This document shows positions 48,214 to 53,207 of a stretch of 64,000 nt of DNA, piece by piece. Position 1 is the first letter of the stretch. Every line of letters begins with the position of its first letter. The stretch is from Setoptus koraiensis (taxonomy: Eukaryota; Animalia; Arthropoda): assembly GCA_048013815.1 (NCBI GenBank), contig CM106586.1:6758001-6822000 (forward strand). Direction: 5' to 3'. The notes under the pieces were generated by a model. It did not search any database. It was not told the DNA's origin and saw only the letters and a program-made list of their open reading frames with translations. Position numbers and translations under genes: made by a program.

Positions 48214-49050
48214 ATGCTTCTCTCTTACCTTGCCAAACTATACGACTACACAAACAACATTGAACAACAGGCGGCCATCTTCGAGGCGCTACGTCAATTG
48301 GCCCATGTTAACGACAACAACATCGCCCTGGAGGAGCCGTTCGACTTGAGCGTCAAATCGAGCTCCGGCTCGTCGCTGAACAGCAGCCACAACAACAGCT
48401 CCGTTGGCGAGCTAAGCGCCTCACTAAAGTCACCCAAAAGATGTCTCATCGAACGCTACATTCAGCAACAACAATCGCCACAACCACTACACCCAAACCA
48501 AAGTAACAATATGGTTGTTAATCCAATGCAAGCATACGACTTGCAGCTACAACAACACCACCAACTTCAACACCACCACCACCACCACCACCAACTTCAA
48601 CAACATACCCAGCTCATGTTGAAACAGCACCATCTAATATCAGACGACGACGAGGAGGACGATCCAAAGAAACAGGCCACCCATAAGCATCAACCATTCA
48701 ATGTCATAAGAGATGATGACAACAATTTCTGTTGCTCATATTGTGCCAAGAAATACACATCTGTTGGTGCATTAAAGATGCATATAAAAACACACACCCT
48801 GCCATGCCAATGTCCCACTTGTGGCAAACAATTTTCCAGACCCTGGCTTTTGCAAGGACACATGAGGACACACACTGGAGAAAAGCCATACAAATGTAAT
48901 GTCTGCCATAGAGCCTTTGCGGATAGATCCAATCTCAGGGCTCATCTACAAACTCATGCCCAAGTTAAAAAGTATTCATGTAAATGTTGTTCAAAAACAT
49001 TCTCCCGTGCCTCATTATTATCCAAACATGAGGATCACTGTTTGAAATGA
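48214..49050 (+). CDS. snail: Snail-family C2H2 zinc-finger transcription factor, copy 2 (278 aa, intronless)
   Basis: Same N-terminus ([10 protein letters not shown]), PFDLSVK motif, and four fingers nearly identical to copy 1. Intact ORF. Confidence 0.95.
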
Positions 49051-49357
49051 TGAGATGATCGACTTGTCTATGTACATATATATATATATATTTTTATATA
49101 AAGAGTATTTATTTATTATTATATTATACACTTTATTTTTGCACATTATTATTACTTTTCCTCTGGAAAGAAAAAAATCTAATAACATTTCTCTCGTTGC
49201 ATGATACATCATAGATCTTCTGACGGCATTCGCAGTGTTGCAAATGTTTGCGGTTTCCATTGAGGCGATCTTGGGATTCTACACCCCTCTTTGAGTCATT
49301 CATTGGACCATCATCATCTATATCGCCATTAACATCCTCGAAACACCAGAGGGGTTT

Positions 49358-49911: not shown

Positions 49912-49963
49912 ACGACGAGGATGACAATCAAATGAAACAAGCCGTCCATGGGCCTCAACCATT
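49911..49963 (+). pseudogene. Short third snail relic (pre-zinc-finger segment)
   Basis: gacgacgaggatgacaatcaaatgaaacaagcc...cctcaaccatt matches copy 2 (gacgacgaggaggacgatccaaagaaacaggcc) and copy 1 (atcaaatgaaacaagcc...cctcaaccatt). Translates DDEDDNQMKQAVHGPQPF. Confidence 0.75.
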
Positions 49964-49973
49964 TATTCAAGCT

Positions 49974-50672
49974 TCAACCACTATGTGACTGATTTAACAA
50001 GTCTTCTGTCTTAGTTTTGAGCATTTTGTCTAAAACATCTATTGAATTATGCATTTCGCATTGCATGTAATCAATAGTATTTCTTACTAGATCCTCCGAC
50101 AAGCTTGCTTTAGTCTGTTGTCTTTTGGCTTTCGATGAGTAGGAGGCAAAAAGGACTTTTATTTCACTCTTTGCCTTTGTAGTGGCCCGGCTAGCTGCCA
50201 TGACCAGTTTCTCTCTATGCTCTCTGGTGACTTTTGGTACAGGTATGTAGATTGTGTTTCCCTCCACTTGGGGATTTGTGTTCCCTAAGGCGGTCAAAGC
50301 TTGTAGTGTTGGCTTGAGAGCCTCTGGCATGGCAGCTAAATTTATCACAATCAAACTGGAGCCCTTACGACTAATTTGGGCCACATCTTTTAGTTTAAAT
50401 AGATTTCCCGATTGAGCATCCTTCTTTCTGTTGTTATCCTTTTTGTCGCTCATATCGTTAGTGTCTTGCATAAGATCGATATCGATGTTATCCACACTCA
50501 ACAAAGCCATTCGACTAGTCAGATTTTTATCAAAGTTATCTTTAACTTCATCCAAGATAGATTTCAATTCCGATCTGTATGATTCAATCTGTACAACAGT
50601 GAGCATTTCGTCGTCGCTCAGACCCACTTTCGGCTTGACTTTTGCTGCCGAGGCCTTCCCTCTCTTGGCTGA
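49974..50672 (-). other. MRRF: Mitochondrial ribosome recycling factor moiety
   Basis: Begins after RRNY with SAKRGKASAAK, resembling the basic mature N-terminus of animal MRRF; RRF core motifs as above. Confidence 0.85.
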
Positions 50673-51677
50673 ATAATTGCGACGTTGTTCAAAATTAACA
50701 GAAGACGACGAATGTCCTATTGTTTTGGTATTATTGTTATCATTGTTATTGTAGTCGCTAGAGAAGGCAGATTTATTGTGCGATCGTGGGTTAGATTTGA
50801 TCGCGTGAATAGCATAGTGGGTCAGGGTTGTAGGTGTCCATATAAAGGTGCCTGATAATGGTTCATACATGAATCCGTTGACGAGTCTTAAATGATAGCC
50901 CATCCTCTCTAGCATTATTTTCAGTCCTACCACATTGACAAACATATCGTAAGTATGTGTGCCTTTGGGCAATTGTTTTAATATGTATTCTCCAAAAAGT
51001 ATGACGCCCAAATAGGCCAATGGTGTCTGATTGATGGTGGTCAAGAACAGACTTCCATTTGGTTTGATGGCCTTGGTGCATTGTTGCAAAAATGGCTCTA
51101 TGTCTCGTATGTGTTCGAGAACCTCTGATGCCACCACAGCATCAAAGTTCTCTATGTTCTTTTGTTCGCCAACAATGTCCTCAATATTACAATTGCGGTA
51201 TTCAGGCCTATCGCCCTCTGACATATTCAATTGGGCGTGCTGCTGAGCCTCGATAATGCTCTCATGGATAGGGTCTATACCCAAGACGCTAGCGCCTAAT
51301 CTGGCAAGCGGTTCACTCAGAATTCCGCCACCGCAACCGACATCGATAATTTTGAATCCTTTGAGGGGTGTTGCTGATGATTCCATCAAATTCAAGCCCT
51401 GCTTGCCCTGTTTCTCCAGTAGTCCATTCCTTATAAGTGGCACTCTCAACTTGTTCATGCCTCTCAATAGAGCAAATTCTTTTCCATTCCACCATTTGCT
51501 GGCATGATCTTTGAATATTTGTCTCTCTGAATAGGATATGTTTGTTTGATTGGAGAGCTCATCTTGATTTAACTTTCTATCCGTCGTCACAAATGATCGT
51601 TTAATTAAACTTGATGCCAAAGTCACGACGTGCGTGTGTCGCCTTGCGTCTCGTTGCAATAATAATTGGGTCAGCAT
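49974..51677 (-). CDS. COQ3-MRRF: In-frame fusion of mitochondrial ubiquinone biosynthesis O-methyltransferase (COQ3) and mitochondrial ribosome recycling factor (MRRF), 567 aa
   Basis: One uninterrupted ORF from ATG 51677. N-half: SAM motif I (IIDVGCGGGILSEPLARLGA), FDAVVASEVLEHI, GSLFLTTIN, LPKGTHTYDMF. C-half: LKDVAQIS, NPQVEGNTIYIPVPKVTREHREKLV (RRF). AATAAA at 49967-49962 on the minus strand. Confidence 0.9.
   Translation of the reverse strand: MLTQLLLQRDARRHTHVVTLASSLIKRSFVTTDRKLNQDELSNQTNISYSERQIFKDHASKWWNGKEFALLRGMNKLRVPLIRNGLLEKQGKQGLNLMESSATPLKGFKIIDVGCGGGILSEPLARLGASVLGIDPIHESIIEAQQHAQLNMSEGDRPEYRNCNIEDIVGEQKNIENFDAVVASEVLEHIRDIEPFLQQCTKAIKPNGSLFLTTINQTPLAYLGVILFGEYILKQLPKGTHTYDMFVNVVGLKIMLERMGYHLRLVNGFMYEPLSGTFIWTPTTLTHYAIHAIKSNPRSHNKSAFSSDYNNNDNNNTKTIGHSSSSVNFEQRRNYSAKRGKASAAKVKPKVGLSDDEMLTVVQIESYRSELKSILDEVKDNFDKNLTSRMALLSVDNIDIDLMQDTNDMSDKKDNNRKKDAQSGNLFKLKDVAQISRKGSSLIVINLAAMPEALKPTLQALTALGNTNPQVEGNTIYIPVPKVTREHREKLVMAASRATTKAKSEIKVLFASYSSKAKRQQTKASLSEDLVRNTIDYMQCEMHNSIDVLDKMLKTKTEDLLNQSHSG
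50796..51677 (-). other. COQ3: COQ3/UbiG methyltransferase moiety, including the predicted mitochondrial presequence
   Basis: Arg-rich N-terminus ending KRSF, followed by complete UbiG/COQ3 motifs ending THYAIHAIK. Confidence 0.9.
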
Positions 51678-52307
51678 TTTTTCGGGGTATTTTAGATTTA
51701 ACAACACGCAAATAAAATATATTATCGACAAAATCTGGTTCTTGTTTTGTGACAGGAAACCAACAACAACAACACGCTGAAAATGTATAAATTAAATATT
51801 GGCTGTTCCAATCGTTCACCGATGGAAATGTAAACATTTTATTACATCAACAAAGCAGAACACATGTCTCGATTTTTACAATATATAACAGCTGTTCTGC
51901 TCAGCTCCATGCGAGCATGCGTTTTGGCGCCCTTTCCCATGAAAACTCTTCCAATTTGGCGAGTCCAACTAAACAATCCTCAATCGAATGTTTTAATTAA
52001 TTTAAATTGTTCCAAACACTACAACTATAATCTACAAAATGCCTTCTGACGAAGCGAACAATATCGCCATGCTCGGGGTATATTCCCTGGTCAATATAAG
52101 TACTTCTTGGTACTGAGGACTTCAACAACTCACATTCGCTGGCAGCCATTTTTGGTCCAACAAACAGTCTAACAAACACCACCTATGCAAATCGTGAAAG
52201 ACACAAAAAAATAATTTGCTTTGATGTTATCGCCAATGTAATGATGATGCAATGATGTAATCTTGCCATTAAATAATCAAGGGCAAGACGGATAACTCAT
52301 ATAGAGC

Positions 52308-53207
52308 TCACTTACCTCGAGGCGTTTCGAACTTGTTGAAATCTGTTTCCGGTGATCTGTAAATTTCGAACTCCAAATGAAGCAATTGTAACTCGGCGTA
52401 GTGGTGTCTCTTCTTTTTTCTCGGAGTTAATGATATCCAGGGTTTATTACAATAATAGTGAGTGTTTTTTTTAAATTTAAAATTCAATCTAGCCACATCA
52501 CTCCATTTGATTGTTTTAATTGATTTGCTATCATTGTCGTCGTCTAGCAAGCTGTTGGTCATCTGATAGGATACTTCGCCTCCGATTGGTTGAACAAAGT
52601 ACTGCCGCTCATTTGTTCTAATATACGCTTGACTGTTTGTTGATGTTCCAATTGGTGTTGACGGTCTATCTAATTGTACAAAGTGCAAATCTATGATGGC
52701 ACAGGTGAATTTAATTGTTACACTTGGCATAAGAGAGTTTAATTGTTCTGTTGATATTGTTTCAATTTCATTCAGAGGCACAGAACCGATGATATCATCT
52801 TGACCACTGTAAATCAATATTCTCCCCGCCAACACAATCTTGACCCTATTGTCGTCGCTTACAAAATCAATCACTTTATCGTAGCTTCTATCTTTCAGTG
52901 TGTTGAGTTTACAAACTCGCCAATCATGTCGAACATTTTTCACTGGTAATGATAATCTTTGTGCCTGAGATATAGCCAATATCGGGGGTATTGTTTTGGG
53001 TACTTGTTGAAGTTCATCACTAAAGTTGGATCTGAGCTCGGAAACATAGACATTAGTAACATAGTGTGGAACTTGTTCATTATCTACATCGTCTTCGTCT
53101 TGGAGATAGTGGTTATCTTTGTTCAATAGCCATATAAAACAGACTAGAGTTATAAATATCAAAAAGGTGATAATGATCACATAAAGCAACCATTTTTTTA
53201 CACTCAT
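52308..53207 (-). CDS. Uncharacterised protein with N-terminal transmembrane/signal-anchor helix (299 aa)
   Basis: ATG-started 299-codon ORF in an AT-rich cluster; hydrophobic WLLYVIIITFLIFITLVCFIWLL. No domain confidently recognised. The 3' end could be spliced (G|GTAAGT at 52315). Confidence 0.7.
   Translation of the reverse strand: MSVKKWLLYVIIITFLIFITLVCFIWLLNKDNHYLQDEDDVDNEQVPHYVTNVYVSELRSNFSDELQQVPKTIPPILAISQAQRLSLPVKNVRHDWRVCKLNTLKDRSYDKVIDFVSDDNRVKIVLAGRILIYSGQDDIIGSVPLNEIETISTEQLNSLMPSVTIKFTCAIIDLHFVQLDRPSTPIGTSTNSQAYIRTNERQYFVQPIGGEVSYQMTNSLLDDDNDSKSIKTIKWSDVARLNFKFKKNTHYYCNKPWISLTPRKKKRHHYAELQLLHLEFEIYRSPETDFNKFETPRGK

What the first reader, a model, noticed from the sequence alone, without database searches (positions are those of the whole stretch)
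49974..51677. COQ3-MRRF tandem mitochondrial precursor with an internal MPP-type cleavage site
Seen: complete COQ3 and complete MRRF in one intronless ORF. The ~40-codon linker is N/S-rich and UTR-like, and there is no Met between COQ3 residue FMYEP and well inside MRRF, so MRRF has no start of its own. The linker ends QRRNY|SAKRGK (50684-50670), and the N-terminal presequence ends KRSF. Known: R-x-Y/F|S is the R-3 mitochondrial processing motif (MPP plus Icp55-type trimming), and tandem precursors cut by MPP exist (fission yeast Rsm22-Cox11, yeast Arg5,6). I know of no COQ3-MRRF case but cannot search. Inference: stop-codon loss created a polyprotein that co-imports and stoichiometrically couples ubiquinone synthesis and mitoribosome recycling, a form of genome compaction.
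Basis: partly seen in the sequence, partly recalled or inferred. Interest (0 to 1): 0.9.

Follow-up and report, generated by a model that had tools for sequence, protein, structure and literature searches.

The report
COQ3–mitochondrial RRF fusion gene in mites
One intronless mite gene encodes a ubiquinone-synthesis enzyme (COQ3) joined to the mitochondrial ribosome recycling factor; about 40 related mites share the fusion, and its conserved joint looks like a mitochondrial cleavage site, though cutting is not shown.

Summary
Window 49974-51677 (minus strand) is one uninterrupted 567-codon ORF. It encodes a complete COQ3/UbiG O-methyltransferase followed by a complete mitochondrial ribosome recycling factor (mtRRF). 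It is not an assembly or annotation accident:
- 41 other fused proteins were found, one of them from the eriophyoid mite Aceria tosichella.
- A second strain keeps the frame.
- A sister species at 85% identity shows dN/dS of 0.05 (COQ3) and 0.10 (RRF).

Other acariform mites have separate genes. The joint carries a sharply conserved motif, N-[Y/H/F]-[E/Q]-Q-[R/K]-R-x-[L/A/M/Y]-[P/A/S]-K, with Q and R invariant in 42 of 42. This fits the arginine-at-minus-2 rule of the mitochondrial processing peptidase (MPP), as in yeast Arg5,6.

No RNA or protein data could be obtained. The equivalent motif already exists in unfused mite mtRRFs. Human mtRRF is reported not to be cleaved on import.

The N/S-rich "UTR-like" linker is a lineage-specific insert, not a relic of the fusion event.

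Verdict: a real, apparently undescribed animal example of a known kind, the composite mitochondrial precursor. Confidence in the fusion is about 0.95; in internal cleavage, about 0.6.

The parts
49974..51677 (-). Whole fused CDS: 567 codons plus the TGA stop. Encodes the COQ3-mtRRF precursor.
   Evidence: 41 fused homologues. dN/dS 0.08 overall against the sister species.
51591..51677 (-). Putative N-terminal mitochondrial presequence, residues 1-29, ending K-R-S-F.
   Evidence: Basic, amphipathic, only 1 acidic residue. The N-termini of the homologues are equally presequence-like but not alignable. AF2 predicts a low-confidence helix. Cleavage is not shown.
50796..51521 (-). COQ3/UbiG O-methyltransferase domain, residues 53-294, with the SAM-binding motif DVGCGGG at 112-118.
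   Evidence: TIGR01983 at 3.5e-61. UbiG 4kdc at 6.9e-32, aligned to the end of the chain. Foldseek TM 0.75-0.78. dN/dS 0.05.
50697..50795 (-). Lineage-specific N/S-rich low-complexity linker, residues 295-327.
   Evidence: Absent from 24 of 42 fused homologues. An 11-codon indel separates it from the sister species. Two of the three non-synonymous strain variants fall here. pLDDT below 50.
50664..50696 (-). Conserved junction motif N-F-E-Q-R-R-N-Y-S-A-K, residues 328-338. Candidate internal MPP site: R333 at -2, a cut before Y335, then possible trimming to S336.
   Evidence: N in 40/42, Q in 42/42, R/K in 41/42, R in 42/42, K in 33/42. Aligns to R-H-F-A-T-K-K of mammalian mtRRF and to R-x-[M/F/Y]-A-K of unfused mite MRRFs. 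Cleavage is inferred, not shown.
49977..50672 (-). mtRRF part, residues 336-567: a Lys-rich N-terminal extension (336-352), then domains I and II.
   Evidence: Pfam RRF at 2e-19. mtRRF 7nsh and 6nu2 at 1e-23 to 1e-24, with the alignment starting at residue 332. Foldseek TM 0.77. dN/dS 0.10.
50403..50468 (-). Lineage-specific charged insert in RRF domain II, about residues 404-425.
   Evidence: Present only in the window and P0001. pLDDT below 50. One non-synonymous strain variant, D411N.
49962..49967 (-). AATAAA hexamer 7 nt after the stop codon; likely the polyadenylation signal of the fused gene.
   Evidence: Function is inferred from position only.

Best explanation
This is a conserved gene fusion in eriophyoid-type mites. 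It makes one nuclear-encoded mitochondrial precursor with, in order:
- an N-terminal presequence;
- a complete COQ3 O-methyltransferase;
- a short disordered joint;
- a complete mitochondrial ribosome recycling factor that has lost its own promoter, start codon and most of its own N-terminal leader.

Shown: the precursor is translated as one chain, and both halves are kept functional by selection.

Inferred: the COQ3 presequence imports the whole chain. The matrix processing peptidase then cuts twice, once after the presequence and once at the conserved joint ...Q-[R/K]-R-x | [L/A/M/Y]-[P/A/S]-K. In the window that is R333-N334 | Y335, possibly followed by aminopeptidase trimming to S336. This would release free COQ3 for the CoQ synthesis complex, and free mtRRF whose Lys-rich N-terminal extension can then reach the peptidyl-transferase region of the mitoribosome.

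The fusion most likely became fixed during the extreme genome streamlining of these mites. It became irreversible once MRRF had lost its own expression and targeting signals.
For: Fusion real and translated as one chain:
- The ORF and both domains are intact.
- 41 further fused proteins were found: 40 at 43-83% identity (46-85% in MAFFT alignments of 21 of them), including Aceria tosichella UniRef A0A6G1S5C7, plus the deeper P0272 at 34-39% to these.
- The frame is kept through linkers of 13-39 residues.
- At least 8 of 42 have no Met at the DxxEM position.
- Against the sister species, dS is about 0.9, dN/dS is 0.05 (COQ3) and 0.10 (RRF), and all indels are in frame.
- The second strain has indels only outside the CDS. 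Its 3 non-synonymous SNPs fall only in low-complexity inserts.

Unfused state in other Acariformes:
- MRRF stands alone in Oppia nitens, Halotydeus destructor, Leptotrombidium deliense and Brevipalpus obovatus.
- COQ3 stands alone in Dinothrombium and Euroglyphus.
- Those MRRFs carry 45-90 extra N-terminal residues that the fused genes lack.

Cleavage (indirect evidence):
- The joint holds an island of conservation with invariant Q and R. The pattern is a basic residue at about -10, Gly or Pro between, R at -2, a mostly hydrophobic +1, a small +2, then K.
- The 20 residues before the Arg average net charge +3.3 with 0.8 acidic residues, like the N-terminal presequences.
- AF2 gives pLDDT below 50 for residues 300-345.
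- MPP cleaves Arg5,6 at an internal RSY of the same type, and junctions of other composite precursors carry such motifs (PMC8734313).
- Many known composite precursors have a mitoribosome-binding partner (PMC5063612).
- In human mtRRF, the segment homologous to the residues just after the joint (K59-V79) packs between domain I and the 39S subunit at the A and P loops (PMC6486771). A 33-kDa domain fixed about 4 residues upstream would probably clash; this last step is my inference.
Against: - No transcript, proteomic or N-terminal data exist for this gene. The runs found behave like DNA assemblies, and no RNA-Seq run was listed.
- The motif is older than the fusion. It is present about 50-90 residues into unfused MRRFs (P0124, Oppia), where a shorter N-terminal presequence could be the real cleaved signal.
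- Human mtRRF showed no size shift on import into rat liver mitochondria (PMC2566884). Predictors place its signal at 26 residues, upstream of the aligned RHF-A.
- The invariance of Q at -4 and N at -7 is more than MPP is known to need. It could reflect another function.
- Pro at +2 in 20 of 42 sequences is not a textbook MPP context.
- TargetP, MitoFates and iMTS-L profiling could not be run. My presequence-likeness measure is only composition.
Confidence: 0.6

Rival explanations
1. Uncleaved bifunctional protein. The chain is imported, loses only its N-terminal presequence, and stays as one ~60-kDa polypeptide carrying both COQ3 and RRF activities. The conserved joint motif would then be part of the RRF N-terminal extension, with a ribosome-contact or other role, rather than a protease site.
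For: - Human mtRRF keeps its N-terminal extension after import (PMC2566884; PMC6486771).
- The motif exists in unfused MRRFs well inside the N-terminal region.
- Conservation of N at -7 and Q at -4 exceeds the usual MPP requirements.
Against: - In most species only about 14-20 residues separate the folded COQ3 domain from the Lys-rich segment. In human mtRRF that segment is buried next to the peptidyl-transferase centre, so steric clash with the ribosome and EF-G2mt is likely (inference).
- COQ3 works in a membrane-associated CoQ complex unrelated to ribosome recycling.
- The joint is predicted to be disordered and accessible.
- The joint has an invariant Arg in a presequence-like context.
Confidence: 0.25
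2. Two proteins made without proteolysis. MRRF would be translated on its own from an internal start (M354, or an internal promoter or IRES) while COQ3 is made from the upstream ORF, so the in-frame joint is incidental.
For: - A Met lies at the start of the RRF core in most species.
- One metagenomic relative (L004) has the COQ3 end and MRRF in different frames, with ATG-ATG exactly at the break. Separate initiation may occur in that lineage.
Against: - At least 8 of 42 fused proteins lack that Met.
- A product starting there would lack both a targeting signal and the Lys-rich extension.
- There would be no reason for the frame to stay open through variable linkers in 42 sequences, nor for the motif upstream of the Met to be invariant.
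- There is no stop for COQ3.
- The AATAAA in the window's linker is not conserved in the sister species.
Confidence: 0.07
3. Artefact or decaying gene: a mis-assembly, a read-through annotation of two neighbouring genes, or a pseudogene.
For: No RNA evidence for this locus. The linker is of low complexity.
Against: - Independent assemblies, including a different strain, give the same continuous ORF.
- 41 fused homologues come from many samples.
- Purifying selection is strong on both halves.
- Catalytic and SAM-binding motifs are invariant.
Confidence: 0.02

Closest known systems
Arg5,6 of Saccharomyces cerevisiae / arg-6 of Neurospora (tandem mitochondrial precursor cut by MPP)
   Same: - Two complete enzymes in one ORF behind a single N-terminal presequence.
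- The junction carries an Arg at -2 with an aromatic or hydrophobic +1 (RSY in Arg5,6, RNY here), in a positively charged, presequence-like stretch.
- The organisation is conserved across a whole clade (PMC8734313).
   Different: - The Arg5,6 partners act in consecutive steps and form a complex, whereas COQ3 and RRF are functionally unrelated.
- Arg5,6 cleavage is proven by import assays, purified MPP and mutants. Here nothing is tested.
- Fungal rather than animal.
Atp25 of S. cerevisiae (Rsf + M domain) and Rsm22-Cox11 of S. pombe
   Same: Composite precursors that join a mitoribosome-binding factor of bacterial ancestry to an unrelated inner-membrane biogenesis protein. Woellhaf et al. note that one partner is often a mitoribosome protein (PMC5063612).
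   Different: - In Atp25 the ribosome factor is the N-terminal half, and cytosolic toxicity of the free factor was shown.
- Here RRF is the C-terminal half, and no toxicity or cleavage data exist.
- The partner proteins are different.
Stand-alone animal mtRRF (human MRRF; Oppia nitens XP_054158723, Halotydeus destructor KAI1286873)
   Same: - The RRF half is an ordinary mtRRF with the Lys-rich N-terminal extension and the R-x-[aromatic/hydrophobic]-A/S-K motif at the same alignment position.
- The core motifs (PKVTREHRE) are kept.
   Different: - Stand-alone proteins have their own start codon and 45-90 N-terminal residues.
- Here these are replaced by an entire COQ3 protein, and only the last ~10 residues of that leader survive.
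Stand-alone COQ3 / UbiG (TIGR01983)
   Same: Full-length match to the end of the UbiG fold, with the SAM-binding motif and family-specific C-terminal strand kept.
   Different: No stop codon after the domain. The window's lineage also has a 15-residue insert near residue 86-100.

Membership tests
COQ3/UbiG O-methyltransferase (TIGR01983) | Profile score above the curated equivalog cut-off over the whole domain | tested here: met
   206.4 bits against a cut-off of 102.95; residues 53-288 cover profile positions 3-227 of 228.
COQ3/UbiG O-methyltransferase (TIGR01983) | Class I methyltransferase fold with the Gly-rich SAM-binding motif | tested here: met
   D112 and G114-G118 (DVGCGGG) are invariant in 22 sequences. 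Foldseek to UbiG 4kdc/5dpm gives TM 0.75-0.78.
COQ3/UbiG O-methyltransferase (TIGR01983) | O-methylation of ubiquinone intermediates | not testable with these tools
   Needs an enzyme assay or complementation of a coq3 mutant.
Mitochondrial ribosome recycling factor (Pfam PF01765 RRF) | Profile score above Pfam's gathering threshold | tested here: met
   70.4 bits against 29.7, residues 424-561. The bacterial equivalog TIGR00496 scores 40.2 against a cut-off of 149.1, so it is not met. This fits the closer match to mitochondrial than to bacterial RRFs.
Mitochondrial ribosome recycling factor (Pfam PF01765 RRF) | Closest solved relatives are mtRRF, including the mito-specific N-terminal extension; two-domain L-shaped fold | tested here: met
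   7nsh_BG at 2.5e-24 and 6nu2_z at 2e-23, aligned from residue 332/350 to 561. Foldseek TM 0.77 to 6nu2/7nsi/7l08.
Mitochondrial ribosome recycling factor (Pfam PF01765 RRF) | Splits post-termination mitoribosomes together with EF-G2mt | not testable with these tools
   Needs biochemistry.
Composite (tandem) mitochondrial precursors processed internally by MPP (Arg5,6, Atp25, Rsm22-Cox11) | Two complete, otherwise independent mature proteins in one ORF with one N-terminal presequence | tested here: met
   The N-termini are basic with 0-1 acidic residues. This is composition only; no predictor was available.
Composite (tandem) mitochondrial precursors processed internally by MPP (Arg5,6, Atp25, Rsm22-Cox11) | MPP recognition motif (Arg at -2/-3) at the junction | tested here: met
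   R is invariant in 42 of 42, with Y/N/H, then L/A/M/Y, then P/A/S, then K. Same type as the mapped RSY of Arg5,6.
Composite (tandem) mitochondrial precursors processed internally by MPP (Arg5,6, Atp25, Rsm22-Cox11) | Internal presequence-like segment (iMTS-L) just upstream of the junction | tested here: inconclusive
   The 20 residues upstream average net charge +3.3 with 0.8 acidic residues. However, the window's own linker is N/S/D-rich, and TargetP/iMLP/MitoFates could not be run.
Composite (tandem) mitochondrial precursors processed internally by MPP (Arg5,6, Atp25, Rsm22-Cox11) | Precursor is actually split into two polypeptides inside mitochondria | not testable with these tools
   No proteomic or import data. 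Human mtRRF is reported uncleaved at the aligned position, which cautions against assuming cleavage here.

The most novel reading that the evidence does not exclude
The fused chain is not cut at the joint. These mites would then run mitoribosome recycling with an RRF permanently tethered to a CoQ-biosynthesis enzyme, physically linking the inner-membrane CoQ synthesis complex to terminating mitoribosomes. Alternatively, the joint toggles between fused and split states by 1-nt frame changes, with the linker serving as MRRF's own presequence, as the L004 contig hints.
Probability: 0.2. Interest if true: 0.8.

Novelty: new member of a known kind. Interest (0 to 1): 0.52.

Why it matters
- Composite mitochondrial precursors cut internally by MPP are documented in fungi and plants, and only "potentially" in animals (PMC8734313). 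A fusion kept across a whole superfamily of mites would give a natural animal test case for internal MPP processing.
- It fits the observation that such precursors often hide a mitoribosome-binding factor behind another protein.
- It shows how extreme genome streamlining can strip a gene of its own promoter, start codon and targeting signal.
- As a rare genomic change, shared with one deeper acariform lineage (P0272/L004), it may be a useful marker for the disputed placement of Eriophyoidea.
- Practically, the public entry for Aceria tosichella is named only as COQ3, so the mtRRF of these mites is hidden from annotation.

Tried and rejected
- **RNA evidence.** The four runs laid on the locus behave like DNA assemblies: contigs of 14-55 kb spanning several genes, with flat depth. 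Run X4 has only short pieces inside ORFs and none across the linker. A second run search restricted to RNA-Seq listed none. Short Logan contigs that might have been transcripts (L002, L003, L006-L008) carry neighbouring genes, so they are genomic.
- **Alternative polyadenylation.** An AATAAA sits in the window's linker at 50777, but the hexamer is absent in the sister species. Rejected.
- **The longer TTG-started ORF (585 aa).** Not conserved. Rejected.
- **A second copy in the window.** tblastn of the protein against all 64 kb finds only itself.
- **Metagenome scan with P0127.** No confirmed locus.
- **Single versus double origin of the fusion.** P0272 does not group with the eriophyoid clade in either half. 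The AU test does not reject one clade of all fused sequences (p 0.16 for RRF, 0.44 for COQ3). Left open.
- **Literature.** Searches for a described COQ3-RRF fusion, and for gene fusions in the eriophyoid genome papers, found nothing.
- **Predictors.** Only crude charge and hydrophobic-moment measures were used.
Full report

Yes. On the minus strand an ORF runs from ATG at 51677 to TGA at 49976-49974, 567 codons, with no stop or frame break.
- The N-terminal half (residues 53-288) matches the UbiG/COQ3 equivalog TIGR01983 at 206 bits (cut-off 103).
- The C-terminal half (424-561) matches Pfam RRF at 70 bits (cut-off 29.7).
- Among solved structures the best matches are E. coli UbiG (6.9e-32, aligned to the last residues of the chain) and mammalian mitochondrial RRF (7nsh 2.5e-24, 6nu2 2e-23). 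The mtRRF alignment starts at residue 332, inside the joint.
- An AF2 model built on 22 homologues gives two folded modules joined by a segment of pLDDT below 50 (residues 300-345). Foldseek recovers UbiG (TM 0.75-0.78) and mtRRF (TM 0.77).

**2. Is it an artefact?**

No.
- Contigs from independent runs cover the locus. One 14-kb contig from a different strain differs by 8 SNPs inside the CDS and has indels only outside it: 7 nt just after the stop, 1 nt in the A-run before the ATG, and 3 nt further upstream.
- Five of those SNPs are synonymous and lie in the folded domains. The three non-synonymous ones (R298Q, S306P, D411N) fall in the two low-complexity inserts.
- A sister species (P0001, locus L001; 83% identity by BLASTP, 85% in MAFFT alignments) has the same single ORF.
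  - dS is about 0.9, and dN/dS is 0.05 for COQ3 and 0.10 for RRF.
  - Every indel is a multiple of three.
  - It has stops upstream of the same ATG, so the TTG-extended ORF in the mechanical list is not real.

**3. How widespread is it?**

A search of 5.8 billion proteins returned 40 proteins that carry both a COQ3-type methyltransferase and an RRF domain, at 43-83% identity.
- One is UniRef A0A6G1S5C7 of the eriophyoid wheat curl mite Aceria tosichella, named there only as COQ3.
- The rest come from anonymous assemblies. All contigs I fetched are genomic.

Other acariform mites have ordinary separate genes:
- MRRF in Oppia nitens, Halotydeus destructor, Leptotrombidium deliense and Brevipalpus obovatus;
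- COQ3 in Dinothrombium tinctorium and Euroglyphus maynei.

In trees of each half, the window plus P0001 fall inside or next to a strongly supported clade of the other fused sequences, including Aceria (98* for RRF, 100/100* for COQ3). The window therefore most likely comes from an eriophyoid mite; this is an inference.

A further, much more divergent fused protein exists: P0272, at 34-39% identity to the eriophyoid ones, with a relative on JGI contig L004.
- Its COQ3 half sits inside the acariform clade (98/96*), but not next to the eriophyoids in the free tree.
- The AU test does not reject a single clade of all fused sequences (p 0.44 for COQ3, 0.16 for RRF).
- Whether the fusion arose once or twice stays open.

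**4. Anatomy of the joint**

I anchored all 42 fused sequences on the joint.
- 24 have exactly 14 residues between the last Lys of the COQ3 fold (HYAxxAxK) and an invariant Arg. The rest have 13-39.
- The window's N/S-rich stretch is therefore a lineage-specific expansion. It is shared only with P0001 and differs from it by an 11-codon indel. It is not a fossil UTR.

Within the joint sits an island of conservation. Numbered for a cut one residue after the invariant Arg:

| Position | Residue(s) | Count (of 42) |
|---|---|---|
| -10 | K | 20 |
| -9 | G | 29 |
| -8 | L/I | 32 |
| -7 | N | 40 |
| -6 | Y/H/F | 39 |
| -5 | E/Q | 40 |
| -4 | Q | 42 |
| -3 | R/K | 41 |
| -2 | R | 42 |
| -1 | Y/N/H | 39 |
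| +1 | L/A/M (also Y, V, S) | 31 for L/A/M |
| +2 | P/A/S | 40 |
| +3 | K | 33 |

- A Lys-rich run follows.
- The 20 residues ending at the Arg average net charge +3.3 with 0.8 acidic residues, much like the N-terminal presequences of the same proteins.
- The standalone mite MRRFs carry 45-90 residues before the equivalent R-x-[M/F/Y]-A-K. The fused genes have lost all of that leader except its last ~10 residues.
- At least 8 of 42 have no Met at the DxxEM position, so independent initiation of RRF is not a conserved option.

**5. Most likely mechanism**

The pattern fits what is known for composite mitochondrial precursors.
- MPP cleaves yeast Arg5,6 both after its presequence and at an internal RSY (Arg at -2, aromatic +1). 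Icp55 trimming is predicted to follow.
- Presequence-like segments with MPP motifs sit at the junctions of Atp25, Rsm22-Cox11 and others (PMC8734313).
- Woellhaf et al. note that one partner of such precursors is often a mitoribosome protein. They showed that the free ribosome-silencing factor of Atp25 is toxic in the cytosol (PMC5063612).
- In human mtRRF, the residues homologous to those just after the joint (K59-V79) lie between domain I and the 39S subunit, at the A and P loops (PMC6486771). A folded 33-kDa COQ3 domain attached a few residues upstream would probably not fit. That is my inference, not a computation.

I therefore favour this sequence of events: import by the COQ3 presequence, an MPP cut at R333-N334 | Y335, optional removal of Y335, and release of two independent proteins.

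From memory rather than any tool result: classical work on MPP describes a proximal Arg, a distal basic residue about ten residues upstream with Gly or Pro in between, and a hydrophobic +1, which the consensus here fits. Also from memory, Icp55 belongs to the X-Pro aminopeptidase family, which would suit the frequent Pro at +2.

**6. Why the processing claim stays uncertain**

- There are no RNA or protein data for this gene.
- The motif is older than the fusion. An unfused MRRF (P0124) has NYYQRR about 50 residues in, behind a separate, typical N-terminal presequence. Oppia has NYTSVRSMAK about 85 residues in.
- Later authors used a construct lacking a predicted 26-residue signal, still upstream of the aligned RHF-A.
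- Invariant Q at -4 and N at -7 exceed what MPP is known to require.

So conservation alone cannot separate "protease site" from "functional part of the RRF extension". My estimates:

| Reading | Probability |
|---|---|
| Fusion is real | about 0.95 |
| Internal cleavage at or near the motif | about 0.6 |
| Uncleaved bifunctional protein | about 0.25 |
| Separate translation | under 0.1 |

**7. Comparison with the known, and novelty**

Each half is an ordinary member of its family. The whole works like the Arg5,6, Atp25 and Rsm22-Cox11 class. The sequence-level criteria of that class are met. The defining biochemical one, actual splitting, is untestable here.

I found no paper describing a COQ3-RRF fusion or gene fusions in eriophyoid genomes. 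It is best filed as a new member of a known kind, of moderate interest:
- a clade-wide animal example of a composite mitochondrial precursor;
- a possible rare-genomic-change marker;
- an annotation trap, because the mtRRF of these mites is hidden under a COQ3 name.

Earlier unverified notes on this genome report several mitochondrial genes with borrowed presequences. If that is true, it would make reshuffling of targeting signals a wider theme of this genome. I did not test those notes.

Noticed in passing
L004:1-240 (JGI 3300030609, contig Ga0247634_10062497): In a distant relative, the COQ3 C-terminus (frame 1, ...NYAMHVEKLTSFKESSSSK...) and a complete MRRF (frame 2, starting ATG-ATG at 149-154) lie on one contig but in different frames. 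The break is at an A4 run. The close relative P0272 has them in one frame. This is either an assembly indel or a natural split state in which the S/K-rich linker plus the YEQRR-YLAK motif would serve as MRRF's own presequence.
   Followed up: partly
P0002 (Aceria tosichella UniRef A0A6G1S5C7), residues 1-75: The predicted N-terminus is a decayed copy of the same protein's COQ3 C-terminal strand and joint (compare ...EPISTGLIYQQTTRH... with ...KPISTGLNYQQKRH...). This suggests a partial tandem duplication upstream of the gene, or a mis-called start.
   Followed up: no
window 51830-51900 (minus strand), L001 5775-5850: A conserved non-coding block about 150-220 nt upstream of the start codon stands out against dS of about 0.9. 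It holds an inverted repeat, CAGAACA ... TGTTCTG, around a CAGCTG core. An AATAAA follows at 51843. It could be the 3' UTR and poly(A) region of the upstream same-strand gene (52308-53207), or a promoter element of the fusion gene.
   Followed up: partly
window 51377-51421 and 50403-50468 (minus strand): The window and its sister species share two lineage-specific inserts that all other fused homologues lack: about 15 residues in COQ3 (near residues 86-100) and about 20 charged residues in RRF domain II (near 404-425). Both are predicted to be disordered.
   Followed up: no
window 48214-49050 (plus strand): The neighbouring ORF encodes a Snail/Scratch-type C2H2 zinc-finger protein with long His/Gln runs. 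Reads from the second strain show many SNPs and small indels around 48849-49193.
   Followed up: no
same genome, other windows (notes s1-325845, s1-325846, s1-330798, s1-330813): Earlier unverified notes claim that several mitochondrial genes of this genome (NDUFS8, IleRS, SCO1, CISD3) carry presequences copied from other mitochondrial genes. Together with this fusion, that would point to frequent reshuffling of targeting signals.
   Followed up: no
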